Origin: Mobula hypostoma
Lineage: Eukaryota
NCBI RefSeq assembly: GCF_963921235.1
Contig: NC_086107.1
Span: 45,694,001-45,758,000, forward strand
DNA: 64,000 nt
Direction: 5' to 3'
In this document: positions 170 to 54,701 of the stretch, piece by piece
Position numbering within the stretch: the stretch's first letter is position 1
Layout: every line of letters starts with the position of its first letter
The notes under the pieces: model-generated
Databases searched by the model: none
What the model was told of the DNA's origin: nothing
The model's input: the letters and a program-made list of their open reading frames with translations, nothing else
Position numbers and translations under genes: made by a program

Positions 170-252
170 TCAATGAAAAAGATACGGCCATCCTTGCAGA
201 CCCCATAAGACCAGTGATCAGGTAGCATCTCCCGCCTCAACCCAGCCGCCAT
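170..252 (-). CDS. PLEKHA7: PLEKHA7 coding exon 1 (start of first WW domain): MAAGLRREMLPDHWSYGVCKDGRIFFI
   Basis: Manual translation from ATG at 252 matches the PLEKHA7 N-terminus (human ...LPEHWSYGVCRDGRVFFI). Ends at phase-2 donor GA|gtacgt (169). CpG-rich surroundings. RPS13 is a neighbour, as in human. Confidence 0.93.
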
Positions 253-30800: not shown

Positions 30801-32827
30801 CTGGTAGCCTTTACTCAGAGCAAACTTCATTTTATGCGTCAACACGTACTCATCCGCTAACTTAGCAGTTGCGGCTAACGTGGCTGCCTCTTTCTCATCT
30901 GGGTAGGGTCTCATACCTTCAGGGACACAACTTTTAAACTGCTCAATCAGGATCAGCTGTAGCAGTCTGTCATAATCCCCCTCTACCCCCTTCGAGGCGC
31001 ACCAACGCTCACAATATGTCTGCATCTCACAGGCAAACTCTAAATACGTGCGGTCCCACTGCTTCCTCGCATTCTGGAACCTCTGCCGGTATGCCTCCGG
31101 GACCAACTCATAAATCCTGAGGATGGCCCCTTTCACCACATCATACCTCTGGGCATCTTCCGCGGACAAAGCTGAGTAAGCTTGTTGGGCTTTCCCTTTT
31201 AGTACACTCTGAAGCAAAACAGCCCACTTAACCCTCGGCCAGTCCTGACGTAGCAACTTTTTCAAAATGGAGAAAGTACCGATCCACATCAGTATCGTCA
31301 AATGGGGGAACCAGCCTAACCTCCTGTGTTGCCCGGAACCCTCTACCTTGGTTCGGCACGGGCCCCTGCTCTGCCATCATCTTTAACTTCTCCAGCTCAA
31401 ATTCCCTTTCCCTCTGCCTCTCTTCTTGCTCCAACTGTCTGTCCCTCTTTTCTCGTTCTGTCTGTCCCTCGCTTCTCGTTCTAACTGCCTCTCTTTCTCC
31501 TGCCGTTCCAACTGCTTCTCTCTCTCTTCGTGTTCTAGTTGCCGTACCCGGAACTCGTGCTCGAGTCTCAGTTTTTCAAGCTGCACCTGTACTGCGTCTC
31601 CACTAGGTTTTCCAATAGGTAACACCTCCAGCTCCCCTTGGGAAAACACACCTTTAGATACATAGTGCTCTACGATAGCTCTGTGCATCTCCTCTCTCCA
31701 CATTGTCGACTTCCCCTTAACAAGATTCAACCGTTTTGCCACAGCTGCCAATTCCGCTTTCCTGGCATCCTCTAATGCCTCCAAGGTCGGCGGCTTTAGA
31801 AATTCCTCAATCTCCATTTCTGCTGTTTGCCTTTTCTTTCTTTCGGGAATTTTAACCCAATCAATTTACTCCGTCCCAAATTTAGCGTTTGAAATCCTGG
31901 ACGAGAACCCCACTTATGTTAGGTACCCTGTAACTGGGTTGCCAAACCAGCAGAAATGGATCACTCAGTTGGTGTCTGGATTACTGGAACTAAGAAAGTT
32001 TTATTAAAGAAATAAGCAACACAGTACTTTAATCAAAAGAATAATAAATGCAACAGTTCAGCAATGATAAACACACATGTCCACAGAACTAGGATAATAG
32101 GATCAATCAAGCTCTATCGTCGTCTAGGGATAAATGACCAGTTTCAAAGTGACGCAAAGTTCAGTTCAATTGAGTTCAGTTTCCAGTAATCACTGCCGTG
32201 GGAGACGGAGAGGGAGAGGGAGAGAATGAATATTTAAAATCGGATTCCAAACAGACCTTCGATATTCCTCACAGTCAGCTTTCGGGCGAGCCCTTTGTAA
32301 TGTCTTCTGAGGTCACCGACTGTGACCCCTCCATTTCAGATACAATCGTTCCTCTGCAGTGAACCTGGCACCCAGGCAAGGGCGGACACACACCAGGTTC
32401 CCGCCGATCATATCTTTCCACCCTGTACGTCTATGGCTTGGTCCCGCGACCAGCCTTCCAAAACAACTCCCGCCGACTTGTGGGAGGCACACCACTTCCA
32501 GGGTGTCGTTACCTCGTGGTGTCCTGTATGTCCTGCCTTAGCGAACCTGTCCCTTTTTATCCCCCTGCTGGGGTATCGCCTGTCCATCACACTTCAAACA
32601 GTTCAGGGTTCAAAAAGGAGCCGATCTTGACAGTTCTCAGACCGGTGTCTCCTTCCGTTAAACTCTCTCGTCTCTTCATTAACATTTCCAAATGCTGCTC
32701 CATTGTCTTCCTTATCTCTCTTTCTCCTGAAGACAGGTGGCAGATCAACTGCTGATCCCACTGGTGCCAGCACAGGACAGTTAACATCTTAATCTATGTG
32801 TACTTTTTGTAACCCTCTTTCATCACA
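27848..32827 (-). mobile_element. Gmr1-like LTR retrotransposon B, internally deleted non-autonomous element (4980 bp)
   Basis: LTRs at 27848-28736 and 31917-32827. TSD GAAC at 27844-27847 and 32828-32831. tRNA-Pro-like primer-binding site tggggttctcgtccaggat. Polypurine tract ggtgagggg. Gag with SCAN and CCHC, and protease WRDTGA, in ORF 30099-31301. Only fragments of integrase, RT and RNase H remain. Confidence 0.93.
30099..31817 (-). pseudogene. gag-protease of element B, nearly intact but split by frameshifts
   Basis: ORFs 31383-31817, 31228-31434 and 30099-31301: coiled coil, PEAYRQRF...LILIEQF SCAN-like domain, CYNCGKVGHFASRC, RDTGA. Confidence 0.87.
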
Positions 32828-34880
32828 GAACAAATGAGGTCCTTATGGAGTACAAGAAATGCAAGAGAACACTTAAGAAAGAAATTAGGAGGACGAAAAG
32901 AAGGCATGAGGTTGCCCTAGCAGACAACGTGAAAGAGAATCCCAAGGGATTCGATAGATAAGTTTCAAGCAGAAGGATTGCAAGGGATAATGTGTTCCCT
33001 TGGACCCTGCGGGAGACAAGTACTGAGATTGCAGGGGCCCTAACAGAGAGGTTTAAATTGTGTGGTACAACAAAGGGATCTGGGAATACAACTCCATCAT
33101 TCATTGATAGTGGTGGCACAGGTAGATAGGGTCATAAAGAAAGCTGTTGGTACATTGACTTTCATAATTCAAAGTATTGAGTACAGGATATGGGATCTTA
33201 TGTTAAAGTTGTACAAGATGGTTAGTGAGGCATAATTTGGAGTATTGGGTGCAGTTTTGGTCACCTACCTACAGGAAAGTTGTAAATAAGGTTGAAAGGG
33301 TACAGAGAAAACTTACAAGGATATTGCCAAGACTGAAGGACCTGAGTTATAGGATTGAATAGGTTAGGGCTTTATTCCTTGGAATATAGAGGACTGGGGG
33401 GAGATTTGATAGAGGTACACAAAATCACAAGGGGTATAGATAGGGTCAATGCAAGCTGAGGTTGGGTGGAACTACAACTACAGGTCATGGGTTAAGGGTG
33501 AATAGTGAAAAGTGTAAGGGGAACACAAGGGGAATCTTCCTCACTTGTGAGCAGGTGGAACAAGTTGCCAGTGCAAGTGGTGCGTGCAAGCTCAATTTCA
33601 ATGTTTAAGAGATGTTTGTATAGGTATATGGATGGCAAGAGTACAGAGGGCTACGGTCTGGTTGCAGATTGACGGGACCAGGCAATTGAAATGGCTCAGC
33701 ATGAACTATATGGGGTGAAGGGCCCATTTTTGTACTGTACTTTTGTATGACTCTTTTACTCAACTATTTTTCCAAATACAAGTTAATTTTTGTTTGTTAC
33801 CCATTAAGCAACACTATTTATATTCCTGCCCAGACTGATACAACCAAAGTGCATACTCTTGAGATATTCACGTGAAACAAAACTAATTATTTCAAATTAT
33901 GAAGAATATTCATCACTCCCTGGCCTGTTAGCACTTCTTACTGTACACTAATAGGCATCAACTGGAATGTGCCTGTACTCAGATGACTTAATTTTTTGAA
34001 TCAAACATGTTTTAACCCAAAAAACTTTTCTAGAGAAATTCCCTAGAAGACAATTTTGTATATTAGTCACTTATGAGGGTACATTTGGAAATTATTAACA
34101 AAAAATCAGTTTTAATATCCTTTGATATAAAATTCAATGCCTAACTTTAATTCAATAACTAAAGCCTACAAAACAAAAGGTAGATAGGTTACAAAGTAAC
34201 ATTAAAAAAATACTGCGACAAATAACAGGATGGTAAGTGAAGAAACCATATTTCAATGCATTGTTCAATGTTGAGGGGTAACTTAACAAGAAGTGACAAA
34301 ATATTTGCCATTAACATAAGTATCTGAATTTGCAATAGTTACATTATCAAAATAGTAATTCTAATTAATAAAAAATCATTCCAATTAGGCAGAAATCAAT
34401 ATTTCAAAAAACTAGATAACATGCCAGTAGATCAGATATTCCAATGATAAGGCAGCCTGGTGAATAGATTTCTGAATCATTCCTTGATCTAGTTGTATCT
34501 GCACACATGAAAAGTGGTTAACTCCTGATACCAGGGTGACAGGCAAGGGACATAGAGGTAGTTATCTCTAGACAAAAACTAACATTTAACTTTAACAGAT
34601 TTCTTCAGACAGTTATAATCAGACTTTTTTTTCCTCCCCACTTATGTTGAAATTGTCATAATCTGATTTGTGAAACAAAGTTGGATTTTGTGATGTCATA
34701 TGAACTTGTTAACATACATAAGGACCAAAATATATTACCAGGCCCAACAGAAAAATGGAGTCATGCACTGCATTAACTACAATGAGTTCAAAATAGTTAT
34801 TCAGAAATCTTCAATGTTTCTCAATCAATAAATCTAATACACAAGATATTGTAAAAGAAATGCATGTTAAATTATACAAA

Positions 34881-34886
34881 TTTATT
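34881..34886 (-). terminator. Candidate polyadenylation signal of the PPP1R15-like gene
   Basis: AATAAA on the minus strand about 365 nt after the stop codon, followed by U/GU-rich sequence. Confidence 0.55.
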
Positions 34887-35250
34887 TTGTTGTAATGTTG
34901 AAATGTAATAATTGAACAGACAAAACCAGAATGGAGAAGCAGTTCTACATGAGCTTTAGTTTCTGGCATCTATTTAATGAACATTGCAGCATTGAAGACA
35001 GTGCAAGCTCTTCCATTATCAAGATTAGAAAATATTCTTGATTCAAAGCTTGGCCTACACATATGGAACCAATGTTAATTTGCAAAGTGCATCAGAATTT
35101 CACATCTCCATCAGGCCAACTTGGAAAGATCCATCAATGTCCCAGATAGTTCATGACTAGCTACTGCAACATTGTTATAACCATATAATCTAAATGGTAA
35201 AAAGGAGATCACAGTCCATCAAGTCCTTTTTACACTCAGTGGCTACAGAA

Positions 35251-35469
35251 TTACACTACATAATTCTGTGAATTGTGAATTTTTTCCCAGATTTTCAATC
35301 TGTGATCCTTTTGGAGACAATAACCAATTGCCATTTCTGTGTTCCGCACCCTGTCTAGGAACCTTAATCTGTCATGAGCTGCCTGTATCCAATGTCCCTT
35401 CCGAGCTTCACGCAAAGCGAAGGACCACGCCACCATTGTGTGAACTTCAACAACAGGAGAAAATCTCAG
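35251..35469 (-). CDS. PPP1R15-like exon 3: PP1/eIF2alpha-binding C-terminal domain
   Basis: Acceptor ttttctcttccag|CTG AGA TTT. Translates LRFSPVVEVHTMVAWSFALREARKGHWIQAAHDRLRFLDRVRNTEMAIGYCLQKDHRLKIWEKIHNSQNYVV*. Confidence 0.95.
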   Translation of the reverse strand: MRFSPVVEVHTMVAWSFALREARKGHWIQAAHDRLRFLDRVRNTEMAIGYCLQKDHRLKIWEKIHNSQNYVV

Positions 35470-38400
35470 CTGGAAGAGAAAATAATCAAAATATTAAAAC
35501 TTTAAAATAACTGAAGCTTTTGGTTCACAAACAAATTGCCACGCTGTTCTGCAGGCAGGCAGTGTTGGAACATGAATGGGGCATTCAACCCTTCAAGTCT
35601 ATTTTGTACTCCATTGATCTTGCATCAGCAGCTTATTGCAGAAGATATTTGACCATTTCAGAAAATCTCAAACTATGCTTAAAAGTTTCTTTTCCAATAG
35701 CCCCTTCCCTTCCTTCCAGTTCTAATTCAAACAAATCTTGGAAATTAAAATGATACCAGAGCAAGCTGATTTGCATAGTAGGCACACAGGTGAGGATGAA
35801 TAAAGATCTCCCGATCACTATCTAAGTGCCTATACCATAAGCATACTCGTTGCTCAAAGTACAATCAAGGATAATCAAGGACATGACCCACCCGCCAACA
35901 CACTTTTCGTCCCTCTTCCCTCCGGGAGAAGGCTCAGGAGCTTGAAGACTCATACGGCCAGATTTGGGAACAGCTTCTTTCCAACTGTGATAAGACTGCT
36001 GCACGGATCCTGACCCGGATCTGGGCCAAACCCTCCAAATATTCGGACCTGCCTCTTGGTTTTTTTGCACTACCTTACTTTTTATTTTTCTATTTTCTAT
36101 TTATGATTTATAATTTAAATGTTTAATATTTACTAACTTTTACTATTTTAAATATTTGTAATCTAGGGAGTGTGAAGCGCACAATGAAATATCGCTGTGA
36201 TGATTGTACGCTCTAGTACCAATTCTTTGGCGACAATAAAGTATAAAGTATACAGCAGAGACAGGAACATACTCCAACAATTCAACAGATCAACTGGCAA
36301 GCCAGTATAAATCCTTCAGAATATGTACAGACGAACAAAAGAAAATAGAATTAACATATTCAAAGCAACACACACAAAACACAAGAGGAACTCAGCAAAT
36401 CAGGCAGAATCTATGAAAATGAAAAAACAGTTGACATTTTGGGTGAAGACCCTTCTTCAGGACTGAAGGAAGGGAGAAGACAACACCAGAATAAAAAGGT
36501 GGGGGGGGTGGGGGGAGGAGGCTAGTTGGAAAGCAATAGGTGAAGCTGGGTGGGTGGGAAAGGTCAAGGGCTGGAGAAGAAGGAATCTGATAGGAGAACA
36601 GAGTAGACCATAGGAGAAATTAAGGGGACCCAGGGTAAAGTGAATAGAGATAAAAGGTCAGATTGGGGAACAGAGGATGGGGGTAATTTTTTTTTAAACC
36701 AGGAGAAATTAATATTCATGCCATCAGGTTGGAGTTCCTCAGATGGAACATAATGTGTTGCTTCTCCACCCTGAGGCCATGGACTAGTATATTCAGCTGG
36801 ACTTCTCACACACTAAGGGTCTTAACTATTAATCATTCCTCTGCTTCCAACAGATGCTACTCAATCTATTGAGTTCCTCCAGTAGCTTTTTTTTTTTTAA
36901 AATTGTTCCAGATTCTTGCATTGCAGTTTCATTTGTAAACCTATTCACCTTGCTGGTTGATGAACTCCTTCACAATGCCACTAAATGCTCAATGTTACTA
37001 CACTGTTGAATGAATTTACATCAATAATGTCACATCCGTGGCAATCAGGTGTATACATCTTGTATTTCAGGCAAGCTTCTGATCATTGCATCTGTTTAAA
37101 ATACTTTACCTTGATACATAAAGTTCATTTTCCATCTAAACTTCAACCAATGCAAATCCAGAAAATATTCTTTCTTTGCTAACCTGTCAGCCATGGCCAT
37201 AAGCCTCCAACAATACCTTGTATTTAACTATGCATGGAAACATTGCGGAATGAAGCTTTGGTTTTGAACTGCGGATGATAGCCCAGTTTATTAAGAAAAA
37301 CTAATAACCAACTTATTACAGCTAAAAGATGACTAAGCAGCAAACATCATACTTACAAAATATCATGTAGCCATTTATCATGTTATGCTTCATATTACTT
37401 AATACAGTTAAGATGTCCTTTATTAGGAAAGTACACAATAACCATTAACATGAAGGTCTGAATGAGCAGTTAATCATTGGTCAGATTACTATGGATACTC
37501 CCAATTTATTTTAAGTGCAATATACAATTCCTCACTGATGCAAGCGAACAATAACAGTGACACTGAGCAAACAACAGTACTTAGAAAGAGAATTACAAAC
37601 AGTTTTAGTATGTCAACATGGATGCTTGATTAAATAATTGTAAATTTGGAAATAATTCATAAAGTAAAAAAGTTGTTTCAGGTTAAAAACTTGAACCTTC
37701 TAGTAAATGATACACTTAGAGGGCAAAATTAGGCTTGGGTATAATGTGTTGTGATATGGTGAAAGCCATTCTTGAATGTTGCATCAACTGCCTTTAGTTA
37801 CAATGGCAGCAGCGGTTCTACTGTTGCAAATGCAAACATGATGCCATGCTTCATTTATTCATCTGGGTGACCTTTGAACTTACTCTTCCAATGCAAAGAA
37901 CCAACCTATACTGAGGGAAGCAAACTTGAATGAAGTATTTTGAATATATTACCAAAGAACATAAGGAACAGAATCAAACACAGATTATGTGTCTCATTGA
38001 CACAAGTCTTGGCCAAAACATTGACTGTTTATTCCCCTCCATTGATGCTGCCTGATCGGAGTTCCACCATCATTGTGTGTATATCTCTCATTTAGACTGC
38101 TTGCTATGCCATTAACCTCAACGGTTTAATTCTATAGCCCTCTATTCCCGGAGAGCCACAAATCCTTGCACCTTCTGGACATTTACAAAGTAAAAAGCTT
38201 TCCTACCATTACATCTATGGTTGCCTGACCTGTCACAGTGACAGTCACTTTCTACAAACCAAACTAAAACACTACCCAAGGTAAGGGACATCACAGTACT
38301 CTGGATCAAAGCATCCATATTCTGAAATTTGCCTCAAAAATTCTGAATCAAGCCTCCTTGAGTGACAAACATTTACAGCAAATGTACTGGCTAAACAAAT

Positions 38401-41400
38401 GCCATCTCACCCAGTTGCTCCCCCACCCTCATGATCTGACAAACCAGAGATTCTCTCTCACTATCACATTCCTGTGTTTTCCATTATTTTAATCACTTGT
38501 TACTCTTTAATGAATTAATTTAATACATTATAATCAAAAATATTCCTGACAAGCCATCAACTATTCAGTACTGCAACCTAGCAAATGTCAGCACATGCTA
38601 AACCCCCTAGCCTTCTGCATGAAGCTTTCACATTACCACATTCTGCTTTTCCTACTTTATCATGCAATCCATTCAAATTATAATTTATAGTTAGACTCTG
38701 CCCCTTAATTTTAACCATTTAAACTCTTACTATTTTCATACTCCCAAGCTATACCATTTCTATATTATTCTCCATAACTTCCACTTTTTAGCTTCCATTA
38801 TCTTCTAAAATAATGGGCTATTTCTACTTGTTAGAATGGTAACCATTAACTTTGCTGGCTTTAGTTCAGACTCAAGTCCCACATGAACTGGAGGACAAAA
38901 AGCATTCTTATCAAAAATCTCTTTTTCCCGCAGTGCTCTTATTTTAAGAAGCAGAAAACACAATCCAAAGACAGTGCTCTCCACCCCATCCACTTTCTCC
39001 CTGTTCCCTATCTACACTTTCTGCTGTGACTTCCCTTAAGTGGTACAAGAATTGATTAAGTGACATGCAAAAGTTTGGGCACCCCGGTCCAAATTTCTGT
39101 TACCATGAATAGTTAAGTGATTAGAAGATGAACTGATCTCCAAAAGTCATAAAGTTAAAGATGAAACATTCTTTTCAACAACAAGATTAGTGTATTATTT
39201 TTGTTTTGTACAATTTTAGAATGAAAAAAAAAGGAAAGGAGCACCATGCAAAAGTTTGGGCACCCCAAGAGATTAGAGCTCTCATAACTTTTACCAAGGT
39301 CTCAGACCTTAATTAGCTTGTTCGGGCTATGGCTTGTTCATAATCGTTAGGAAAGGCAAGGTGATGCAAATTTCAAAGCTTTATAAATACCCTGACTCCT
39401 CAAACCTTGTCCCAACAATCAGCAGCCATGGGCTCCTCTAAGCAGCTGCCTAGCACTCTGAAAATTAAAATAAATGATGCCCACAAATCAGGAGAAGGCC
39501 AAGAAGATAGCAAAGCATTTTCAGGTACCCATTTCCTCAGTTCATAATGTAATTAAGAAATGGCAGTTAACAGGAATGGTGGAGGTCAAGTTGAGGTCTG
39601 GAAGACCAAGAAAACTTCAAGAGAACTGCTCGTAGGATTGCTAGAAAGGCAATTCAAAACGCCCGTTTGACTGCAAAAGACCTTCAGGAAGATTTAGCAG
39701 ACTCTGGAGTGGTGGTGCACTGTTCGACTGTGCAGCGACACCTGCACAAATATGAATTTCATGTCATCAGAAGAAAACCTTTCCTGCATCGTCACCACAA
39801 AATTCAGCATTAGAAGTTTGCAAAGGAACATCTAAACAAGCCTGATGCATTTTGGAAACAAGTGCTGTGGACTGATGAAGTTAAAATAGAACTTTTTGGT
39901 CGCAATGAACAAAGGTATGTTTGGAGAAAAAAGGGTGCAGAGTTTCATGAAAAGAACACCTCTCCAGCTGTTAAGTATGGGGGTGGATCGATCATGCTTT
40001 GGGCTTGTGTTGCAGCCAGTGGCACAGGGAACATTTCACTGGTAGAGAGAAGAATGAATTCAATTAAATACCAGCAAATTCTGGAAGCAAACGTCACACC
40101 ATTTGTAAAAAAGCTAAAGGTGAAAAGAGGATGGCTTCTACAACAGGCTAATGATCCTAAACACACCTCAAAATCCACAATGGACCACCTCAAGAGGCAC
40201 AAACTGAAGGTTTTGCCATGGCCCTCACAGTCCCCCGACCTAAACATCATTGAAAATCTGTGGGTAGACCTCCAAAGAGCAGTGCATGCAAGAAGGCCCA
40301 AGAATCTCACAGAACTAGAAACCTTTTGCAAGGAAGAATGGGCAAAAATCCCCCAAACAAGAATTGAAAGACTGGCTACAGAAAGCGTTTACAAGATGTG
40401 ATACTTGCTAAAGGGGGTGTTACTGACCATGCAGGGTGCCCAAACTTTTGCTTTGGGCCTTTTTCCTTTTTTGTTATTTTGAAACTGTAAAAGATGGAAA
40501 TAAAAAAGTAATCTTGCTTAAAATATTAAAGAAATGTGTTACCTTTAACTTTATGCCTTTTGGAAATCAGATCATCTTTTACTCACTTAGCTATTCAGTA
40601 ACAGAAATTTTGACCAGAGGTGCCCAAATTTTTGCATGCTACTGTATTAAGCTGACCAGACTTGCTTTACATCTCCTTAAACAGAAGCATTTCAGTGGAT
40701 TACACACCAGTCATTGGCATTTCAATTAAAACAATGGAAGCCTTGCTAAATGAGAAAATGCAAAAACAAACCAAATAGATAACTTATTCCAAAACAGATA
40801 GTTTTGCTTTGTTAGCATTCTAGACATGACAGTAGTGGATGATATTACCAAATTTTTAGAAGTCAGATTGAAAGTGTCAGAAATAAATTAAAACATGGAA
40901 AGATTGAATGGTTGGTGAACTGAAATATTAACTGCTTCTGTCTCTACAAATGTTGCCTAAATTCCTCAGGTTCAGCATTTTCACTGGGATTATGATATTT
41001 TTATAGAAATAAAAGAATACCAAAGATGAAGGAAAGTATAAATATTTGATATGGGCATACCTTTTTACTGGTTGGTTTACCCATGACGTTGCCTTTTTCG
41101 AGTTTAGTGCATTTCGATGACTTTCTCCACACATGTAATTTGACATTTTCCCCAGCACCAAGTTTGCAAAAGTGTTGGAAATGCCTCTGTGATAAAATTG
41201 GTTTCTGTGCAAATGATACATTTACTTTAGCTGTGCTGGCTTTCCTCTTCACATTCTTTTCTAAACACTGTTCCTTTAAATCTTCAGCGACTCTTCTTGT
41301 GGAAGAACTAGTAAGTTGTGCAGAAAAATTCCATGGATTGTAGATGTCTGTTGTAAAGAAAGATTTCCAAAGTATTTCATTCTGTTCCTCATCACTAAGT

Positions 41401-44367
41401 GATTCGTAACTATTGCACTGAGTAGATGACTCTTCAGAGTCATCCCATTCATCATCATCAGTCGAACTGCAATCTTCTTCATCATCCACTTCATTCTTCT
41501 GTTCTCTCATAAGTTTTGTAAATGCACTTTGATTGACAGGGTACCCAACAACCACACATTTGCCATCAGTCATACAGTTACCATCATCTCTGAAGTATTC
41601 TTGGTTGAACTTATTATTCAGATAAGGTTGACAATAGTCCTCCTCAGTACTGGGCTGCAAATTTTTTTCTGATTTAAATGGAGGCATAGAGATTATTTTG
41701 TGGTCAGTTAAATTACATTCATTTAAGGTCAATTGAGAATTAATTTCTTTGGCAGTCTTTACGAATCTGCACTGCAGGCTACAGGCATCATTGGTACCAA
41801 ATGCTCTTCCAAACCCGTTCAGTAAACTTTTGTCACATTTTTTGACTTCAACCACTTGTTCATTACTTGGTGGCCCCTTGTCTATAGGCTTGAGATGTGA
41901 TGATCTGGATAGCCGAAGAACTGCAAAATATCAAATCCAAGATGAAATTGGCTATGATGGCATAATCACAAACATGCCAAATATTAATAACTTATCTTTA
42001 TAAATGATTAGGCTGAAGACAGACAGACCATCCCAGACCCCTTCAGTTTCACATCTCTAAAAGACAGAGAAGGTGGTGTACCATTATGATTCAACTGAAG
42101 TCTTGGTCCAATAAGAATCAAATACACATTCACACACGCCCCAGCTCCTTCATGTTTCTGTAATACATCAAATGGTCATTGTATACACCTATATTTCCAA
42201 TCTTTCAGATCTGCAAATGAATGTTAAGTGATAAACACAAGAGATTTGGCAGATGCTGGAAATCCAGAGCAACCAGCATTTTGTGTGTGTTGCCCACAGA
42301 GTACTTACGAAATTGGACAGTCAGTATGGCAGCAACCATCAAGCTTGTTTCAAGACCTTCCCTGATATTATTATAACTCAATGGTTAAAAACAAAAGCTT
42401 CCTTCCCTTTCTTGCAATGCCCTTCCTGCCAATGTCCCTAAAAAGCATCATCTTGCTGTCAAGCAAATTTAGTGGGGAAAAACTAGTGAGTAGAATTAAC
42501 AGTAATCCCAAATTAGACTTGAAGACAGAACTAACTTAATGTCACTGTTACAATTTACATTCACCAAAATGAGGGTGCTATACATTTATCCATAAATCCT
42601 AAATCCCCTACATAGATCTGTCTTTCCAAATTCATCACAATCCAATTATTTCATAAAATCTAAGGCACGAAATCCACAAAAACTGCAAGCAACACTATTT
42701 ATCTCAAATATGGCTGTCATACTAAGAAAGAAACTTCGTAACAATGTATGGCAATATTTTCTCTAACGTGCATCCAACCTGATGGCATAAGCATTGAGTT
42801 TTCGAAATTCTGGTAACCCCCACCCGTCCTGCAAATTTCCTCATTCCTGCTTCCCCCTCTGACCTGATCTCCTTACCTACTCATCACCTCCCTCTGGTGC
42901 TGCACCTCCTTCCCTTTCTCCCATAGTTCTTTATCCTCTCCTTTCAGATTCGCCCGTCCACATCCCTTTCTCTTTCACCATCAACTTCTCAGCTCTACTT
43001 CACCCCCCCCCCTCGTTTCATCCATCATCTACCACCTTGTACCTCTTCTTCCTCCCATCTTCTCACGTACCCCGTGACGGGGATAAAGAAACCAGCAGAA
43101 ATAGAAACCACTTTGGAGTCCAGTATTGCTATAAACTACTAATATTAGCGGGGGGGAGGGGAGGCATAGACAACTCCCCACCAGTCAACCCCCTACGTTG
43201 GAATAGCAATTTGGATCAATCCGCCTGATTGATCCTCCAAAACCCACTTTCTCTGTGGGCACAACAATGCTCATTCAGTGTCCAGAACATGTGTCCTGAG
43301 GTCTGTATCATCTGACCTCCTATTTATTTGTGCTGAGCATCACCTGTCATTCAAAGAGTCCCTCCCTCCTTTGTCTACAAAGAAATGCACAAGCAGGCAG
43401 TAAGTCCTTGAAAGTAACATCAATAATGTGCTGAAAATCATAACATCGCGTGTCCATTAAATAACACTGCCTTTGGTCACCATAGCAACCTTCGAGCTGC
43501 TCGGTGCTGTCTCCAACTCCAAACTCAGTAAAAATCCAAAGTTTCTTCCAATGCCTTAAAGTGACAGTCCAACCGTCAATCTTCGTCTCTCTCTCTCTCT
43601 CTTCAAAAGCAACAAAGCGGTAGTAAATAACTCTCTCTCTCCTTTCCAAACAAACCATCAATGATAAATGTCTCTCTCTGTTTCTCTTCAAACAGTTAAT
43701 AGGGGCACACCTGGATCCCCTCACACTCCGGCTTCTCTTCTTTCCAGTCCTGGTGAAGGGTCTCAGCCAGATACGTCAATCATTTACTCTTTTATTCGTC
43801 GTTGCTGCCTGGCCTGCTGAGTTCCTCCAGCATCTGCAGACTTCCTCGTGTTTATGACTTCATAACAAGCATTTGTTTTAACAATGCTGGCTCAGATTAC
43901 GAAAGCGCTTACCCGTACGGACCCGTTCAGAAAGACGGATAGCCAAGGTTTACCACAGGCAGCCAATCCTTTTCTGGTGATCTGAACCAGTAAGTGTTAA
44001 AACACACACACACACAACACGGGACTGAAACATGACCAACACTGTTGTTTCAGAACATAGGAGAGATCACGAACAACACTCCCATCAATTATAACGTTCT
44101 GCGCACCAAGAGTCTTGGTTTAGAATTCCAAAGGGAACGAAATACATCACAAACCCTTTCGACGGAGGCAAACTGTTTTTTCAGCCCCGCGTCCCCTGCT
44201 CATCAAGGGTTTCGCTTACCTGAGTGGAGCTTAATCAACAGCGCAAGAAAGACCCTGAACTGGGTCAGCAGAATCAGCCCACAGTGCCACAGGATGGACA
44301 GAGAGCAACTAACCCTGGCGAAAAGGGTGGTTGAGTGTTGATTGTGAATGTGCTTGACGGGAACCAT
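35251..44367 (-). CDS. Protein phosphatase 1 regulatory subunit 15 family protein (GADD34/CReP-like eIF2alpha phosphatase subunit), 3 coding exons, 408 aa
   Basis: Join 44367-44220, 41920-41061, 35469-35251 = 1227 nt, open frame, GT-AG introns with matching phases (1, then 0). Contains a hydrophobic N-terminus, an acidic tract, the PPP1R15 motif LWKSFFTTDIYNPWNFSA, KKLRF, and the eIF2alpha-binding motif RKGHWIQAAHDRLRF...AIGYCL...R..IW. Confidence 0.88.
35857..36252 (+). mobile_element. Rex1-like LINE 3' fragment in PPP1R15-like intron 2
   Basis: HP...F..LPSGRR...R..NSFFP-type C-terminus and a (taaagta)n tail. Confidence 0.7.
36361..36780 (-). mobile_element. Penelope-like 3' fragment
   Basis: LQPDGMNINFS end of the GIY-YIG domain plus a pLTR similar to 9652-10100. 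Confidence 0.75.
39059..40644 (+). mobile_element. Tc1/mariner DNA transposon (long terminal inverted repeats with internal direct repeats, DD34E), full-length but defective
   Basis: About 200-bp inverted repeats with outer and inner catgcaaaagtttgggcaccc motifs. TA flank. Transposase from ATG at 39428 with frameshifts and a stop; motifs WTDE, QQANDPKH (catalytic D changed to A), SPDLNIIE. Confidence 0.93.
41061..41920 (-). CDS. PPP1R15-like exon 2 (860 bp)
   Basis: Acceptor attttgcag at 41921-41922 and donor AAG|gtatgc at 41060. Overlaps the 284-aa ORF with the acidic tract and the LWxSF..D.YNP.NF.A motif. Confidence 0.92.
42800..43855 (+). mobile_element. Penelope-like 3' fragment interrupted by a solo LTR
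   Basis: Pyrimidine-rich 3' region continues after 43725 into cagtcctggtgaagggtctcagcc...cctgctgagttcctccag. Confidence 0.7.
43061..43725 (-). mobile_element. Solo LTR (Gmr1-like family related to element B LTRs), internally deleted
   Basis: Begins cacgtaccccg...aaaccagcagaaat...tggagtc like 26645 and 27848. Ends tcaca. TSD not clear. Confidence 0.7.
44220..44367 (-). CDS. PPP1R15-like coding exon 1: MVPVKHIHNQHSTTLFARVSCSLSILWHCGLILLTQFRVFLALLIKLHS
   Basis: Strong Kozak context gacATGg. Consensus donor CAG|gtaagc in phase 1, matching exon 2. CpG-rich region. Hydrophobic segment consistent with a membrane anchor. Confidence 0.75.
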
Positions 44368-44549
44368 GTCACTGAAACAGCCTTGTAGCCGAGCCACGAC
44401 ACCAAAGGAAGACCGGTTTAACACCAACACAACCTTGCCTTTATCTTCTGATAACTTGAACAATATTTGGTGCTCCCAAAGCCCGAACACTACCAATGGA
44501 CAACGAATCGAGATGGCAATGCTTCTCTTCCGTAATCAGAAGGATCCCC

Positions 44550-45020
44550 TCTACAGAGGGAAATCACGTAGAAACATATACTATATCATCAGGCACCAGA
44601 GTTTCCACAACGTCACACGGGAAATTCCGACCAGAGCACGGGGGAAGCCTCAAATCACCCCAAATGAGTCACCAATACGATTACCACTTGTTTTGAATGA
44701 ACCCACCCAACATACCTCTCCAGCAGTTGCTATTAATTAATTAATTAGTTTTTGTTCTTAGTGTCGTTTATGAACTTGCCAGTCCGATTTTCAAAATATA
44801 ATTTCGCAGAATGATTCAACCAGGCAGTTACTTGGGGTTATAAAGCATTAATGTAAGATAAGCAAATATTTGCGGTCTTTATGGGACAAAAACTAGGAAT
44901 TATAATAGCTAATTTGGCACTATCAAATTGTTGCCCAGTCCTTCGATTTCAATTGGATTAATTGTGGTAACGTAACGACTGTTTCTGGAAGCAAATCCAT
45001 AATTATAGCTGACGTCATGA
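44550..45020 (-). promoter_or_regulatory. Putative promoter of the PPP1R15-like gene
   Basis: TATA-like 44576-44586, half-CRE 44610-44615, NF-kB GGGAAATTCC 44619-44628, AP-1 TGAGTCA 44665-44671 with adjacent CCAAT, full CRE TGACGTCA 45010-45017. Confidence 0.6.
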
Positions 45021-45639
45021 ACTGCGTCGAAAGCGCGGGGTTGACAAAACTTGCAAAATAATTATCTTCGCGCACAGTAGACGGAAAAACAGCTGAAATC
45101 ATGGAAATAACAATTCCTCAAAACAATACTCCCACTTCGATATCCCTCCGGCAGTGCACATCAATTCCGTTCCTGTGAATTTCTGCCATTAAGGTCTGAA
45201 TTCCAATTCAAGCTATCCAAGTTTCTAAACGCTGCTATTAATGATAACGTCTTCAGGTACTCTGGTTCGGAGCTATGACAGTTCCTCCGTAAAATTTAGT
45301 TACCGACCTCTTCAGACCACGCCTAAAGATTTATCTGCACGGGCTTTCTGTCACTGACCCAGTTTCTCCGAATGTCTGAAGTGTTCAATTTTACCTGGTA
45401 AAATGGAAAGAAGCAGGAACCTTTTTGTACGTCGATAAGCCATTGGAAGACGAAATAAGTCAGTTCTCTGCTAGGAAAGGCAATTAAAGAAATTCAGCGT
45501 GATATGTATGAGAATAACTATTGCTGGAGTCAACGCGGCAAGATTCTGGTGATATCTATACTGAGTTGGATTTTTAAAAAGTTTTTTTTATCCTGCATAT
45601 AGCAGTATTTCATAGGATTCCGTGGATTGGCCATTTAGA

Positions 45640-48600
45640 ATCAATAGGCTTGCCTAACGAGAGGGTAGTAGTCGACGGAACTTTTAATTCTGGCCGGTGA
45701 TCTTGACTAATGGTGTTCCGCAGGGAGCCATGTTGGGACCTCAGCTCTGTGATATATGTAGGTGACCTGAATGCGTATGTGAATCGGTAAGTTAATGAAT
45801 TTGTAGATGCAGACTGTGTGGATAGCGTGGAAGACTGCTAAAGAACACTGTGGTATATAGATCAGATAGGGAGGGAAAATTGTCAGTTGTGGAGTTGAAA
45901 CCAACCGAATGAAAAAATGTTGCATTTGTGGGCATCAGATGTAAACAGACTTAAAAAGCAAAGGATGTCAGGATTTAAGTCCATGGCTCCCTGATTGTAG
46001 TCACAAGTTTACAGGATGGTAAGAGCAGATGGTACGCTTGCCTCGAGAAATGGAGTTCAAGAGTCAGGAAATAATATGCAGCATTGTAAACTGCAGCTAG
46101 GCCACGTGGAATTATTACAGACAGTTCAGATTGTCCTTCCATTAGGCAGTCATCTTAAACAGTGGTGGGGGCTTTTTGTTGTAATATTAGCAGGCCTTTT
46201 GAGCCACACCACTTAGCAATTGCCAGTTTAATCCTAGCCGAATCACAGGACAATTTACAATGACAATTAACCTAACCAGTAGGTCTAAAGACCATGGGAG
46301 GAAACTGCAATACCCAGAAAAAAAAACCAAGCATTCTACAAGCAGAACATATAGAAACATAGAAAACCCACAGCACAATACAGGCCCTTTCTCCCACAAA
46401 GTTGTGCCAAACATGTCCCTACCTTAGAAAATACTCGGCTTACCCATAGCCCTCTATTTTCCTGAGCTCCATGTACCTATCCAAAAGTCTCTTAAAAGAC
46501 CCTATTGTATCCGCCTCCACCGCCGTTGCTGGCAGCCCATTCCACGCACTCACCACTCTCTGAGTAAAAATACTTATCCCTGACATCTCCTCTGTACCTG
46601 CTTCCCAGTACCTTAAACCTGTGTCCTCTTGTGGCAACCATTTCAGCCCTGGGAAAAAGCCTCTGACTATCCACACGATCAATGCCTTTCATTATCTTAT
46701 ACACCTCTATCAGGTCACCTCTCATCCTCCGTCGCTCCAAGGAGAAAAGGTCGAGTTCACTCAACCTTTTTTCTTTTTGGGAGCATGCCTTATGAGAATG
46801 GGTTGAGTGAAGTTGAAGTCATTTTGTTATTTTTGTATCTTTCAAAATCTGCCTTCCAATCTGCACCTCAGTGTCTCTGTTACTGTTGTGGGGGTAAGAA
46901 TGGGTCAATAGAATACTCCCAATAGAGTGATTGCTCCCTTCCTGTTTATTACTTCCACCCACACTGACTCAGCACACGATGCCTCCAAGTACTCCCTTTT
47001 GCAGTTGTGAATATTACCCCTGATTAACAATACCACTCCCACACACCTTTTTTTATCTCCCTTCCTGCCTTTTTGTAGCATCCAAACCCCTGATCAACCA
47101 GCAGCTATTCCTGCCTTTGTGATGGCCAAATCTCTGTAATGGTCACATCATAATTCCACAAATTCACCCATGCTCTGAGTTTTCTACACGATCAATGCCT
47201 CTCATCCTCCGTCGCTCCATGGAAAAAAGGCTGATTTCACTCAACCTGTTTTCATAAGGTATGCCTCCCAATCCAGGCAACATCCTTGTAAAGCTCCTCT
47301 GCACCCTTTCTACATCCACATCCTTCCTGTAGTGAGGTGACCAGAACTGAGCATAGTATTCCAAGTGGGATCTGACTAGGGTCCTATATAGCTGCAACAT
47401 TACCTCTCGGCTCATAAATTCCACAATTGAAGGTCAATACACCATATGCCTTAACCAGGGTCAACCTCTGCAGCTGCTTTGGAGTCAGACCCCAAGATCC
47501 CTCCAATCCTCTACACTGCCAAGAGTCTTACTATTAATACTATATTCTGCCATCATATTTGACCTACTGAAATGAACCACTTCACACTTATCTGGGTTGA
47601 ATTCCATCTGCCAATTCTCAGCCCAGTTTTGCATCTTATCAATGTCCCACTATAACCTCTGACAGCCCTCCACACCTCCAACCATCAAACTTACTAACCC
47701 ATCCCTCCACTTCCTCATCCAGGTTATTTATACAAATCACAGAGAGCAAGAGACCAAGATGATCCCTGAGGCACACCACTGGTCACTGACCTCTGTGCAG
47801 AATATGACCCCCCTACAACCACTTTTTGCCTTCTGTGGACAAGCCAGTTCTGGATCAACAAAGCAACGTCCCCTTGGATCCCATGCCTCCTTACTTTCTC
47901 AGTAAGCTGCTTTTTTAAAAAAATTAATGACGTGGATGTTGGGGTAGAAGGGTGGGTTGGCAAGTTTGCAGACGACACAAAGGTTGGTGGTGTAGATAGT
48001 GTAGAGGATTGTCAAAGATTGCAGAGACATTGATAGGATGCAGAAGTGGGCTGAGAAGTGGCAGATGGAGTTCAACCCTGAGAGTGTGAGGTAGTACACT
48101 TTGGAAGGACAAACTCCAAGGCAGAGTACAAAGTAAATGGCAGGATACTTCATAGTGTGGAGGAGCAGAGGGCTCTGGGGGTACATGTCCACAGATCCCT
48201 GAAAGTTACCTCACAGGTGGATAGGGTAGTTAAGAAAGCTTATGGGATGTTAGCTTTCCTCAGTCGAGGGATAGAGTTTAAGAGTCACAATGTAATGATG
48301 CAGCTCTATAAAACTCCAGTTAGGCCACACTTGGAGTAGTGTCCAGTTCTGGTCGCCTCACTATAGGAAGGATGTGGAAGCATTGGAAAGGGTACAGAGA
48401 TTTACCAGGATGCTGCCTGGTTTAGAGAGTATGCATTATGATCAGAGATGAAGGGAGCTCGGGCTTTACTCTTTGGAGAGGAGGATGAGAGGAGACATGA
48501 TAGAGGTGTACAAGATAGTAAGAGGAATAGATAGAGTGGATAGCCAGCACCTCTTCCCCAGGGCACAACTGTTCAATACAAGAGGGCATGGCTTTAAGGT

Positions 48601-49465
48601 AATGGGTGGGAAGTTCAAGGGGGATATTAGAGGAAGGTTTTTTTTACTCAGAGTGGGTGGTGCGTGGAATGCACTGCCAGAGTCAGTGGTGGAGGCATAC
48701 ACACTAGTGAAGTTTAAGAGACTACTAGACAGGTAGATGGAGGAATTTAAGGTGGAGGCTTATATGGGAGGCAGGGTTTGAGTGTCGGCACATTGTGGGC
48801 AAAAGGGCCTGTACTGTGCTGTACTATTCTATGTTCTATGGGGTACCTTATCAAATGCCTTGCTGAAATCCAAATACACTACATCTACTGCCCTTTCTTC
48901 ATCAACGTGTTTAGTCACATCCTCAAAAAATTCAATCAGGCTCGTAAGGCACGACCTGCCTTTGACAAAGCTATGCTGACTATTCCTAATCATATGCCTC
49001 TCCAAATGTTCATAAATCCTGCCTCTCAGGATCTTCTCCATCATCAACCACCGAAGTAAGACTCATTGGTCTGATTTCCTGGGCTATCACTACTCCCTTT
49101 TCTGAATAAGGAAACATCTGCAACCCTCCAATCCTCTGGAACCTCTCCCATCCCCATTGATAATGCAAAGATCACCACCAGATGCTCAGCAATCTCCTCC
49201 CTTGCCTCCCACAGTAGCCTGGGGTACATCTCATCTGGTCCCGGTGACTTATCCAACTTGATGTTTTCCAAAAGTTCCAGCACATCCTCTTTAATATCTA
49301 CGTGCTCTAACTGCAAGTCATCACTACAATCACTAAGATCCTTTTGCATAGTGAATACTGAAGTATTCATTAAGTACCTCTGCCATTTCCTCCAGTTCCA
49401 TACACACTTTCCCAACTGTCACACTTGATAGGTCATATTCTTTCACATCTTATCCTCTTGTGCTT
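45640..49465. mobile_element. Cluster of CR1 LINE fragments: 45640-46170 (+), 46345-46765 (-), and about 46830-49465 (-) interrupted by a younger CR1 at 47930-48840 (+)
   Basis: ORFs with LERRRMRGDLIE, SGVPQGS, DKSPGPD, YLDFSKAFDKVPH. (ttctatg)n tails. Confidence 0.85.
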
Positions 49466-50863
49466 CAGTCCTTTCAGAGAACATTGGGTCAACAGGGACA
49501 GTAATTGGAAGGATATGGTTATCATGCAGATTAATTCAGTATTTTAAAAAATAGTTCAGCATAACTTTGAGCGGAAGGACCTATACTCGTGTTGTACTGG
49601 TCAATATTGTGCTCTGGATAGGAATAAGCTATCAATCTGGAAGAGCAAACCTCAGATTGAAAATGGAAAGTACACATTTAGAAGACTTGACTAAGTTCTG
49701 AAAAGATACTGTTTTGTAGCATCCAGTTGTGATGCAAACCCTTATTGTTTTGCCTATAAATAGCATTTTAATTCTCTCCTCCATTTACAAGTGCAGGTAG
49801 ACCATCCTTGGGCTCACATTTCTCATGCCATTTATTCATTCCTACCCATCTTTTCAAATTCTTTGGTACAGTACTTTAAACTACAATCTCAGTCTATAAA
49901 CAATTGTAAATAGAAGAATTGAACCAAATATTCATTTGTCTCCTCAAAGTGAAGACAATGCTATTGTCACATTTGAACCAACTACTACATTTTAATAAAG
50001 GGCAATGTTCATTTACATAGTAGCCTGGTTTAACTGCGGCACATTGTAACTGCTAAATCTAACTACCTGCACTTTAGAAGTACTGCACTTAATAATTGTT
50101 TCCTTTGCACTGTATTGCCGCTGCAAAATAGGTTTCACAGCCAGTCAGTGATGTTCCTGATTCTGCTTCTAATACTACCAAAGCAGTTTTTCAAGCCTTT
50201 ATTTTAGGATGTTTTTCCAGAATATAGTTTGCAAATGGTTTATAGTTCCAAAAGGTTTGCAAACAAGTATTTCAGAACAGCCAGCTGAAAGAACTAAGTC
50301 CATGCATTAAGAATTCAGGGCAAGTGATGTTCAACGAATCTGTAGGATTTAAAAAAAAAACAAACTTCATTTATTTAGGATGTGACACAAAGACAAATAT
50401 TGTTTTAAAAGCAGCTGAACAATCAGCAGTGAAGAACATCTACAAAGAATAACATCGCCAACACAATGTTTGCTCAAATGAACAGCCTTGTTAACTAGTT
50501 TAGGTCAGGGTAGGCCACTTTTATAATAGATGGAACTAAGTGAACATTTCCATGACAGGACAACAGATCCAATCAAGAATACGTCAATAAATCCTTTTAA
50601 TGTCTTTACGAATTATAATCTTAAATGGGAGTCAGGTTAAAACCCATTTGGATATTAAGTTTGCAAATACAAGAGGATAAGGAATCATCCTCACAGGAAG
50701 ATTTGTCCCAGACTTGCAATCCTTGGTAGCAAGTTTTAACCAGTACAAAGAAACTTGTAACAACACTGCTTGGCCATACATCTATTATGCATTTTAATAG
50801 TGTAATACCAAGGCTTCCATCTCAATCAAAACTCAAGACGTGTTAGTTAGCATGACAAATTGA

Positions 50864-50869
50864 TTTATT
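50864..50869 (-). terminator. RPS13 polyadenylation signal AATAAA
   Basis: 35 nt after the stop codon, giving the short 3' UTR typical of ribosomal protein genes. Confidence 0.85.
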
Positions 50870-50904
50870 TTTTCTGAGATCCATTCAGTCAATGAAGAGA
50901 GTCC

Positions 50905-54701
<3,797 letters not shown>

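What the first reader, a model, noticed from the sequence alone, without database searches (positions are those of the whole stretch)
35251..44367. Candidate third vertebrate PPP1R15 paralogue (eIF2alpha phosphatase subunit) between PLEKHA7 and RPS13
Seen: an intact 408-codon, three-exon PPP1R15-family gene in the order PLEKHA7(-), PPP1R15-like(-), RPS13(-). Known: mammals have two members, PPP1R15A/GADD34 (beside PLEKHA4 and NUCB1) and PPP1R15B/CReP (between PLEKHA6 and PIK3C2B, same orientation). The paralogous human block PLEKHA7-RPS13-PIK3C2A-NUCB2 has none. Inference: this gene occupies the equivalent slot of that paralogon, so it is probably neither A nor B but a whole-genome-duplication ohnologue lost in human. 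It would be an additional, apparently uncharacterised arm of the integrated stress response. Its sequence is mosaic: A-like RFS..V.VH...W after the PP1 motif, B-like LWxSF..D.YNP.NF.A and AIGYCL. Automated pipelines may already label it '15A-like' or '15B-like', and other non-mammalian vertebrates may retain it.
Basis: partly seen in the sequence, partly recalled or inferred. Interest (0 to 1): 0.9.

Follow-up and report, generated by a model that had tools for sequence, protein, structure and literature searches.

The report
Third PPP1R15 paralogue in devil ray
A devil-ray genome carries an intact, transcribed third version of the gene family that ends the cell's stress-induced shutdown of protein synthesis. 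It is an ancient duplicate that cartilaginous fishes, ray-finned fishes and lungfish kept and land vertebrates appear to lack, and databases label it inconsistently.

Summary
A 408-codon, three-exon PPP1R15-family gene lies on the minus strand at 44367..35251. All splice sites are canonical, spliced RNA contigs support the junctions, and the Pfam PP1c_bdg match scores 51.9 bits. The window is 100% identical to Mobula hypostoma chromosome OY992602.1. The minus-strand gene order is RPS13, this gene, then PLEKHA7 exon 1.

Two independent alignments each give three vertebrate clades. This gene falls in a third clade with sharks, chimaera, lungfish, bowfin, sturgeon and teleosts. Members checked in eight species of this clade all lie directly downstream of RPS13. 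A teleost B-type gene lies next to a PIK3C2 gene instead. A clade-specific motif and a shared phase-1 intron add support. The same Mobula chromosome also carries an A-clade gene.

Caveats:
- No B-type gene was found in any cartilaginous fish, and the AU test does not reject a chondrichthyan-plus-B grouping.
- A 2022 PLEKHA7 paper already noted a "Plekha7-Ppp1r15b" block in these fishes.

Most core residues for PP1, G-actin and eIF2alpha contacts are kept, but E583, R587 and R594 are changed. dN/dS is 0.36-0.44. I class it as a new member of a known kind.

The parts
44368..44573 (-). 5' untranslated leader, at least 206 nt, with no upstream ATG
   Evidence: RNA contigs reach 44518 and 44573. 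No ATG lies between 44573 and 44368; the nearest upstream ATG is at 44577.
44220..44367 (-). Coding exon 1 (codons 1-49 plus 1 nt), ending in a phase-1 donor CAG|GTAAG
   Evidence: The junction 44220 to 41920 is seen in RNA contigs. A phase-1 intron at the same place occurs in Hypanus, Pristis and the Megalops C-type gene.
44224..44325 (-). N-terminal hydrophobic segment (residues 15-48), a likely membrane-association helix
   Evidence: Kyte-Doolittle 19-residue mean peaks at 1.93 for the window starting at residue 29. Comparable hydrophobic N-termini occur in other members of the third clade.
41061..41920 (-). Coding exon 2 (860 nt)
   Evidence: The pieces of the RNA contigs end exactly at 41920 and 41061.
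41319..41486 (-). Acidic tract followed by the family-wide motif LWxSF..D.YNP.NF.A (residues 195-250)
   Evidence: Pfam PP1c_bdg covers it. It aligns to a PPP1R15B chain, 9hvf_A, at E 0.0012. The near-invariant P of DPYNP is I here.
41166..41195 (-). Motif specific to the third clade, LSQRHFQHFC (general form LPxRHF[KQR]H[YF]C)
   Evidence: Found in 12 of 21 third-clade proteins (rays, sharks, bowfin, sturgeon, teleosts, lungfish). Found in 0 of 19 A, 0 of 13 B and 0 of 12 outgroup proteins.
35251..35469 (-). Coding exon 3 with the stop codon, carrying the conserved C-terminal functional core
   Evidence: It aligns to human PPP1R15A in 7nzm_C (E 9.8e-8) and to PPP1R15B in 4v0u_E (E 1.8e-7).
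35461..41066 (-). PP1-docking motif KKLRF, split KK|LRF by the phase-0 last intron
   Evidence: The same phase-0 intron (KK|VRF) occurs in A, B and third-clade genes of other species.
169..255 (-). PLEKHA7 coding exon 1 (start of WW domain 1), the downstream neighbour
   Evidence: tblastx against the 5' end of Callorhinchus PLEKHA7 gives 79% identity over 29 aa.
51794..54158 (-). RPS13 coding exons (the part seen), the upstream neighbour, with three intronic SNORD14 genes
   Evidence: RPS13 peptide motifs were found in the minus-strand frames. Rfam SNORD14 matches at 51577-51668, 51941-52036 and 53090-53182.

Best explanation
This is the Mobula hypostoma copy of a third jawed-vertebrate PPP1R15 gene, here called the C type. 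It is an ancient duplicate sitting in the block PIK3C2A, RPS13, [this gene], PLEKHA7. That block is paralogous to PIK3C2B-PPP1R15B-PLEKHA6 and to the PPP1R15A-PLEKHA4 region.

Shown here:
- The gene is intact, spliced and transcribed.
- It is under purifying selection.
- It belongs to the PPP1R15 family.
- It groups with RPS13-linked genes of other fishes, not with the A or B clade.

Inferred:
- The hydrophobic N-terminus tethers the protein to membranes.
- The KKLRF motif and the following V.VH segment dock the PP1 catalytic subunit.
- The C-terminal helices bind G-actin through the equivalents of human PPP1R15A F592, R595 and R612.
- They present phosphorylated eIF2alpha through the equivalents of W582, D588 and R591.
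- The complex would therefore dephosphorylate eIF2alpha and end the integrated stress response.
- The observed 5' leader has no upstream ORF, so expression may not be boosted by stress in the way PPP1R15A and PPP1R15B are.
For: Gene model and splicing.

Family membership: Pfam PP1c_bdg at 51.9 bits, and matches to solved PPP1R15A and PPP1R15B chains.

Phylogeny: three clades in two alignments, with C at 91/89 and 94/88, A at 91/82 and 86/89, and B at 99/94 and 100/99. Grouping the chondrichthyan C genes with the chondrichthyan A genes is rejected (AU p 0.0135).

Synteny: RPS13 followed by the C gene in Hypanus, Pristis, Mobula, Chiloscyllium, Callorhinchus (with PLEKHA7 next), Amia, Megalops and Synchiropus. 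In Synchiropus the order is PIK3C2, RPS13, C, PLEKHA7. The Megalops B-type gene, which has a weak CReP_N hit, lies next to a PIK3C2 gene.

Other markers: a C-only motif and a phase-1 intron shared by ray and teleost C genes. Mobula also has an A-clade gene on the same chromosome, 58.7 Mb away.

Selection: dN/dS is 0.36-0.44 overall and 0.24-0.28 in the core.

Core residues: 32 of 35 highly conserved family columns are kept in elasmobranch C genes, including R578, W582, D588, F592, R595 and R612. The functional roles of these residues come from PMC8500838.
Against: - No B-type gene was found in any cartilaginous fish. The AU test does not reject a chondrichthyan-C-plus-B clade (p 0.085 and 0.247). 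Orthology to the bony-fish C genes therefore rests on the best tree plus synteny, the motif and the intron.
- The alignments are short (105 and 196 columns), and the order of A, B and C is unresolved.
- Three near-invariant core positions are changed in elasmobranchs: E583 to I/M, R587 to H/Y/N/L, and the P of DPYNP. R594 is D here, V556 is L in rays, and the Hypanus orthologue has R591 as S. These changes could weaken eIF2alpha handling.
- No biochemical evidence exists.
- RNA depth in the window's own species is low, about 3-4.
Confidence: 0.75

Rival explanations
1. It is simply the cartilaginous-fish orthologue of PPP1R15B (CReP), as NCBI labels it. Cartilaginous fishes would then have the usual two genes, and the "third clade" would be an artefact of fast B-clade evolution.
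For: NCBI names it "15B" or "15B-like" in Mobula, Pristis, Narcine and Callorhinchus. No separate B-type gene was seen in any cartilaginous fish. AU tests do not reject a chondrichthyan-C-plus-B clade (p 0.085 and 0.247).
Against: Teleosts hold both a B-type gene beside PIK3C2 and an RPS13-linked gene that groups with this one. This gene lies in the PLEKHA7 paralogon, not the PLEKHA6 one. There is no CReP_N hit. It has the VH...W core that the B clade lacks, plus the C-only motif and intron.
Confidence: 0.1
2. It is a genuine third paralogue that has drifted away from eIF2alpha in sharks and rays. It would now be a PP1-targeting subunit with weakened or different substrate choice, or a gene under relaxed constraint.
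For: Changes shared by elasmobranchs occur at near-invariant core positions E583 and R587 and in the DPYNP motif. R594 is lost, V556 is L in rays, and Hypanus has R591 as S. R591 and R594 contact eIF2alpha in the human complex. Overall dN/dS of 0.36-0.44 is only moderate. The elasmobranch stem branch is long (0.24).
Against: After those changes the core still evolves at dN/dS 0.24-0.28 among rays. The G-actin contacts F592, R595 and R612 are kept, as are W582 and D588. The R594A mutation had the mildest effect in the human protein. Position 581 varies among family members: H, as here, also occurs in Bufo and Synchiropus.
Confidence: 0.2
3. It is a lineage-specific duplicate of the cartilaginous-fish A-type gene that landed next to RPS13.
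For: The core resembles the A type (RFSPVVxVH..W), and both genes lie on one chromosome in Mobula.
Against: A chondrichthyan-C-plus-chondrichthyan-A clade is rejected (AU p 0.0135). The same RPS13-linked position is held by orthologues in bony fishes. In Hypanus, Pristis and Narcine the two genes lie on contigs of different length. The A-like core features are ancestral and also occur in invertebrates.
Confidence: 0.02

Closest known systems
PPP1R15B / CReP (constitutive eIF2alpha phosphatase subunit)
   Same: Shares the PP1c_bdg domain, the LWxSF..DPYNP.NF.A motif, AIGYCL and the phase-0 intron inside the PP1-docking motif. It also occupies the equivalent slot next to a PLEKHA4/5/6/7 gene and a PIK3C2 gene.
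   Different: It falls in a separate clade and has no CReP_N domain. It keeps the ancestral VH..MxxWSFA segment that B replaced with VxEYY..DED. It is 408 aa against about 700, lies in the PLEKHA7 paralogon rather than the PLEKHA6 one, and has an extra phase-1 intron.
PPP1R15A / GADD34 (stress-inducible eIF2alpha phosphatase subunit)
   Same: Shares the core KxRFSxxVxVH...W...RxGxW...DRxRF..R, aligned to 7nzm_C over 68 residues. It also has a hydrophobic N-terminus and a two-exon split at the docking motif.
   Different: It falls in a separate clade, and the AU test rejects union with the chondrichthyan A genes. The same genome has its own A-clade gene (P0235). No upstream ORF is seen in the leader. 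No FLKAWVY-type repeats were looked for or seen. R594 is D, and E583 and R587 are changed.
The "Ppp1r15b" gene next to Plekha7 noted in PMC8983885 (2022)
   Same: It is the same locus. That paper lists Plekha7-Ppp1r15b, Plekha6-Ppp1r15b and Plekha4-Ppp1r15a as paralogous blocks, and says the Plekha7 block is kept only in Chondrichthyes and Actinopterygii.
   Different: The paper uses the gene only as a synteny marker, under the name Ppp1r15b. It gives no phylogeny, motif, transcript or functional analysis of it, and it reports loss in all sarcopterygians, whereas a lungfish member is found here.
Invertebrate PPP1R15 and viral ICP34.5 / DP71L
   Same: They share the roughly 70-residue core. The invertebrate cores carry the same VH.M..WSFAYR.ARKG.WE pattern.
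   Different: Those proteins form the outgroup (98/97). They lack the vertebrate mid motif in most rows, and all lack the C-specific motif.

Membership tests
PPP1R15 family (Pfam PF10488 PP1c_bdg) | Profile match above Pfam's gathering score | tested here: met
   51.9 bits against a cut-off of 26.1 on P0003, which equals the window's C-terminal 222 aa. The Hypanus orthologue scores 45.8 bits.
PPP1R15 family (Pfam PF10488 PP1c_bdg) | RVxF-type PP1-docking motif followed by the V.VH segment | tested here: met
   KKLRFSPVVEVH is present. L replaces the usual V (V in 96% of other members), and this is specific to rays.
PPP1R15 family (Pfam PF10488 PP1c_bdg) | Core residues shown to matter in human PPP1R15A: W582, R591 and R594 (eIF2alpha side); F592, R595 and R612 (G-actin) | tested here: inconclusive
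   W582, D588, R591, F592, R595 and R612 are kept, but R594 is D. E583 and R587, which are near-invariant across the family, are changed.
PPP1R15 family (Pfam PF10488 PP1c_bdg) | Phase-0 intron inside the docking motif (KK|VRF) | tested here: met
   It is present in the window and in A, B and C genes of other species.
PPP1R15 family (Pfam PF10488 PP1c_bdg) | Binds PP1c and G-actin and promotes eIF2alpha-P dephosphorylation | not testable with these tools
   This needs biochemistry or a cell reporter assay.
PPP1R15B / CReP orthology group | Falls in the B clade | tested here: not met
   The B clade (99/94 and 100/99) excludes it. A forced chondrichthyan-C-plus-B clade is not rejected (p 0.085, 0.247).
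PPP1R15B / CReP orthology group | CReP_N domain (PF10472) | tested here: not met
   No hit in P0001, P0003, P0005, P0158, P0007, P0009 or P0018. The Megalops B-type protein has a weak hit, and several other B-type proteins carry the precomputed domain.
PPP1R15B / CReP orthology group | Position between PIK3C2B and PLEKHA6 | tested here: not met
   The window gene lies between RPS13 and PLEKHA7. The Megalops B-type gene lies next to a PIK3C2 gene.
PPP1R15A / GADD34 orthology group | Falls in the A clade | tested here: not met
   The A clade (91/82 and 86/89) excludes it. Union with the chondrichthyan A genes is rejected (AU p 0.0135). Mobula has its own A-clade gene, P0235.
PPP1R15A / GADD34 orthology group | Upstream ORFs in the 5' leader that give stress-resistant translation (established for mammalian PPP1R15A and B; from my own knowledge) | tested here: not met
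   There is no ATG in the transcript-supported 206-nt leader. The true transcription start is not mapped.
Third (RPS13-linked) PPP1R15 clade | Lies directly downstream of RPS13, in the same orientation, upstream of PLEKHA7 | tested here: met
   Seen in the window and in eight other species.
Third (RPS13-linked) PPP1R15 clade | Motif LPxRHF[KQR]H[YF]C upstream of the docking motif | tested here: met
   LSQRHFQHFC at residues 292-301. The motif occurs in 12 of 21 C proteins and in 0 of 44 others.
Third (RPS13-linked) PPP1R15 clade | Phase-1 intron after the N-terminal hydrophobic segment | tested here: met
   Seen in the window, Hypanus, Pristis and the Megalops C-type gene.

The most novel reading that the evidence does not exclude
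The three PPP1R15 duplicates may have been retained differently in each lineage. Cartilaginous fishes would keep A and C and lack B. Ray-finned fishes would keep B and C and lack A. Tetrapods and coelacanth would keep A and B, and lungfish would still hold C. If so, the gene called "ppp1r15a" or gadd34 in ray-finned fish models would be the C duplicate, not the orthologue of mammalian GADD34. The feedback arm of the integrated stress response would then have been built from different duplicates in fish and mammals. No actinopterygian fell in the A clade and no chondrichthyan in the B clade among the proteins I could name. NCBI calls the RPS13-linked bowfin gene "PPP1R15A".
Probability: 0.35. 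Interest if true: 0.7.

Novelty: new member of a known kind. Interest (0 to 1): 0.55.

Why it matters
Reviews of the integrated stress response describe the vertebrate PPP1R15 family as two proteins, GADD34 and CReP (PMC10743859).

This work shows a third, anciently duplicated member. It is intact and expressed in a ray and conserved across cartilaginous fishes, ray-finned fishes and lungfish. Source records name it "15A", "15A-like", "15B", "15B-like", "DP71L", "PLEKHA7" or "uncharacterized".

It matters in three ways:
- Gene naming and orthology calls in fish models of the stress response need review.
- It gives a natural series of core variants at residues known to contact eIF2alpha.
- It adds a clean marker to the PLEKHA4/5/6/7 - PIK3C2 paralogon.

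The finding is not a new mechanism, and its existence beside Plekha7 was already mentioned in passing in 2022.

Tried and rejected
The alignment of 65 family members shows that the motifs are ancestral.
- P0100 was first used as an outgroup and then fell beside the sharks on a branch of length 1.04. The protein atlas points to arthropod PPP1R15, so I treated this as long-branch attraction and removed it.
- The B-profile word search was swamped by 8000 candidates, probably drawn in by acidic low-complexity words. It returned mostly frogs, so its silence on cartilaginous fishes is weak evidence.
- The lungfish locus returned no DNA and no neighbours, because the gene spans 106 kb.
- Neither supplementary file search of PMC8983885, for ppp1r15 or rps13, gave any hit.
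- The Rojas 2015 motif paper is not held, so I did not use its consensus.
- The term "PPP1R15C" occurs in one pig-muscle paper only, which I did not read and which looks unrelated.
- Searches of earlier scan notes for PPP1R15, PLEKHA6, PIK3C2B, PLEKHA4 and NUCB1 found nothing.
- I made no structure prediction. The protein is largely disordered outside a core that folds only on PP1 and actin, so a monomer model would add little.
Full report
**Gene model.** On the minus strand an ATG at 44367 opens a 148-nt exon that ends at a CAG|GTAAG donor. An 860-nt exon runs from 41920 to 41061. A 219-nt exon runs from 35469 to 35251 and ends in TAA. All acceptors are AG and all donors GT. The joined reading frame is 1227 nt, or 408 codons plus a stop.

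**Family.** Pfam PP1c_bdg (PF10488) hits exon 2 and exon 3 when they are translated separately. P0003, the NCBI model for Mobula hypostoma, has 222 residues identical to the C-terminal 222 residues of my model and spans the last junction. It scores 51.9 bits against a cut-off of 26.1. It also aligns to human PPP1R15A in the holophosphatase structure 7NZM (E 9.8e-8), to PPP1R15B in 4V0U (E 1.8e-7), and, through its acidic and LWxSF region, to PPP1R15B in 9HVF.

**Source of the window.** A locus fetched from Mobula hypostoma GCA_963921235.1, chromosome OY992602.1 (45,719,251-45,745,510), is 100% identical over 26,260 bases to window 51510..25251. The public model there is cut down to 222 aa, starting at an internal Met at 41510. 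The Hypanus (413 aa), Pristis (398 aa) and Narcine (408 aa) models keep the exon-1 N-terminus, which supports the longer model.

**Transcripts.**
- RNA contigs from a closely related species lie on 44518/44573..44220. They then jump straight to 41920..41061 and continue for 208 and 573 more bases beyond the stretch I laid.
- A contig 100% identical to the window ends its exon-2 piece exactly at 41061 and has 298 further bases.
- Both introns are therefore removed as predicted.
- The leader is at least 206 nt and contains no ATG.
- Depth in the window's own species is low.

**Neighbours.** RPS13 peptide segments lie on the minus strand between 54158 and 51794, with three SNORD14 genes in its introns. 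PLEKHA7 coding exon 1, the start of the first WW domain, lies at 255..169 on the minus strand. The minus-strand order is RPS13, this gene, about 35 kb of transposon-rich spacer, then PLEKHA7.

**Relatives.** A profile of the four ray proteins, searched against 1.84 billion representatives, found 875 family members. The best are from sharks (391 aa), Callorhinchus, bowfin, sturgeon, tarpon, other teleosts and the lungfish Protopterus. Their source names range over "15A", "15A-like", "15B", "15B-like", "DP71L", "PLEKHA7" and "uncharacterized".

**Phylogeny.**
- I built a careful tree of 64 named proteins on 105 profile-aligned columns. It gives three vertebrate clades against an invertebrate outgroup (98/97), as follows.
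- A (91/82) holds chondrichthyans, coelacanth, amphibians and reptiles.
- B (99/94) holds tetrapods and teleosts.
- C (91/89) holds the window gene, rays, sharks, chimaera, lungfish and ray-finned fishes.
- An independent MAFFT alignment of 196 columns gives the same three clades: C 94/88, A 86/89, B 100/99.
- The branching order of A, B and C is unresolved.
- Forcing the chondrichthyan C genes together with the chondrichthyan A genes is rejected (AU p 0.0135).
- Forcing them together with B is not rejected (p 0.085 and 0.247).

**Synteny.**
- The C-clade gene lies immediately downstream of RPS13, in the same orientation, in eight species. These are Hypanus, Pristis, Mobula, Chiloscyllium, Callorhinchus (followed by a WW/PH gene of 1269 aa, which is PLEKHA7), Amia, Megalops cyprinoides and Synchiropus.
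- In Synchiropus the full order is a class II PI3K, RPS13, C, then a WW/PH gene.
- A B-clade protein of Megalops atlanticus, with a weak CReP_N hit, lies directly after a class II PI3K gene.
- Thus one teleost genus has both a B-type gene in the PIK3C2 slot and a C-type gene in the RPS13-PLEKHA7 slot.
- From established knowledge of the human map, PIK3C2B-PPP1R15B-PLEKHA6 and PIK3C2A-RPS13-PLEKHA7 are paralogous blocks. This pattern is what whole-genome duplication predicts.

**Two further markers.**
- The motif LPxRHF[KQR]H[YF]C, about 40 residues before the docking motif, occurs in 12 of 21 C proteins, from rays to lungfish, and in none of 44 A, B or outgroup proteins.
- A phase-1 intron after the hydrophobic N-terminus is shared by rays and the tarpon C gene.
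- The phase-0 intron splitting KK|(V/L)RF is common to A, B and C.

**The same genome.** Mobula hypostoma has a second family member, P0235 (424 aa, labelled "15B-like"), at 104.40 Mb on the same chromosome. It falls in the A clade with other ray and shark proteins. I found no B-clade gene in any cartilaginous fish and no A-clade gene in any ray-finned fish. My searches could miss them, so this is only a lead.

**Selection and likely function.**
- Pairwise dN/dS among Mobula, Hypanus and Pristis is 0.36-0.44 overall and 0.24-0.28 in the core.
- Of the 35 alignment columns that are at least 80% conserved in the other family members (30 to 59 residues per column), elasmobranch C genes keep 32. 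These include R578, W582, D588, F592, R595 and R612 in human PPP1R15A numbering.
- In the human complex W582, R591 and R594 serve substrate binding, and F592, R595 and R612 bind G-actin (PMC8500838).
- Changes are E583 to I/M, R587 to H/Y/N/L, the P of DPYNP, R594 to D, and V556 to L in rays. Hypanus also has R591 as S.
- Residues 15-48 are strongly hydrophobic, with a peak Kyte-Doolittle mean of 1.93.
- I infer a membrane-tethered PP1 and G-actin eIF2alpha phosphatase subunit. Some drift in substrate contacts in sharks and rays is possible.

**Prior knowledge.**
- PMC8983885 (2022) lists "Plekha7-Ppp1r15b, Plekha6-Ppp1r15b and Plekha4-Ppp1r15a" as paralogous blocks. It says the Plekha7 block survives only in Chondrichthyes and Actinopterygii.
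- A 2012 kisspeptin paper counted two PPP1R15 paralogues in this paralogon.
- A 2023 family review describes two vertebrate members.
- No held paper names or studies a third member.
- The gene is therefore annotated and has been seen in passing, but it is not recognised as a separate family member.

Noticed in passing
window 54880-55177 (+): A full-length metazoan 7SL (SRP) RNA gene (259 bits) lies head-to-head with RPS13. Three SNORD14 copies lie in RPS13 introns at 51577-51668, 51941-52036 and 53090-53182 (minus strand).
   Followed up: partly
window 41510 (minus strand); locus L003: The public NCBI model for this gene in Mobula hypostoma is cut to 222 aa, starting at an internal Met. It misses exon 1 and the first half of exon 2, which transcripts and orthologues support.
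   Followed up: yes
window 39474-40401 (+), inside intron 2: A Tc1/mariner-like transposase remnant (ORFs of 53 and 179 aa) lies here. RNA contigs pile on 39100-40700 at depths in the thousands, so the repeat family appears to be abundantly transcribed.
   Followed up: no
window 42100-42299 and 43700-43899 (intron 1): Two short stretches reach RNA-contig depths of 10,000-80,000, with many joints between them on opposite strands. This looks like a pair of inverted copies of a very abundant short repeat.
   Followed up: no
window 14000-33000: The 35-kb spacer between this gene and PLEKHA7 exon 1 is filled with mobile elements. Gag/pol-like ORFs lie at 16306-20197 (+) and 28911-31817 (-). LINE reverse-transcriptase ORFs lie at 21123-24426 (-).
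   Followed up: no
L008 (Mobula OY992602.1, 104.40 Mb): The A-clade PPP1R15 gene of Mobula lies on the same chromosome as the C gene, 58.7 Mb away. In Hypanus, Pristis and Narcine the two genes lie on contigs of different length. This may reflect a chromosome fusion in the Mobula lineage.
   Followed up: no
P0001 (Hypanus sabinus orthologue), core: Hypanus has Ser in place of the Arg equivalent to human R591, the eIF2alpha-contacting residue whose mutation was among the most damaging in vitro. Mobula, Pristis, Narcine and the sharks keep Arg.
   Followed up: partly
P0100 and its group (P0145, P0150, P0151): A probably arthropod PPP1R15 group carries a core (DWMQLALDR) that converges on the shark C-type core (QWMQIALDR). 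This pulled it next to the sharks in the first tree.
   Followed up: partly
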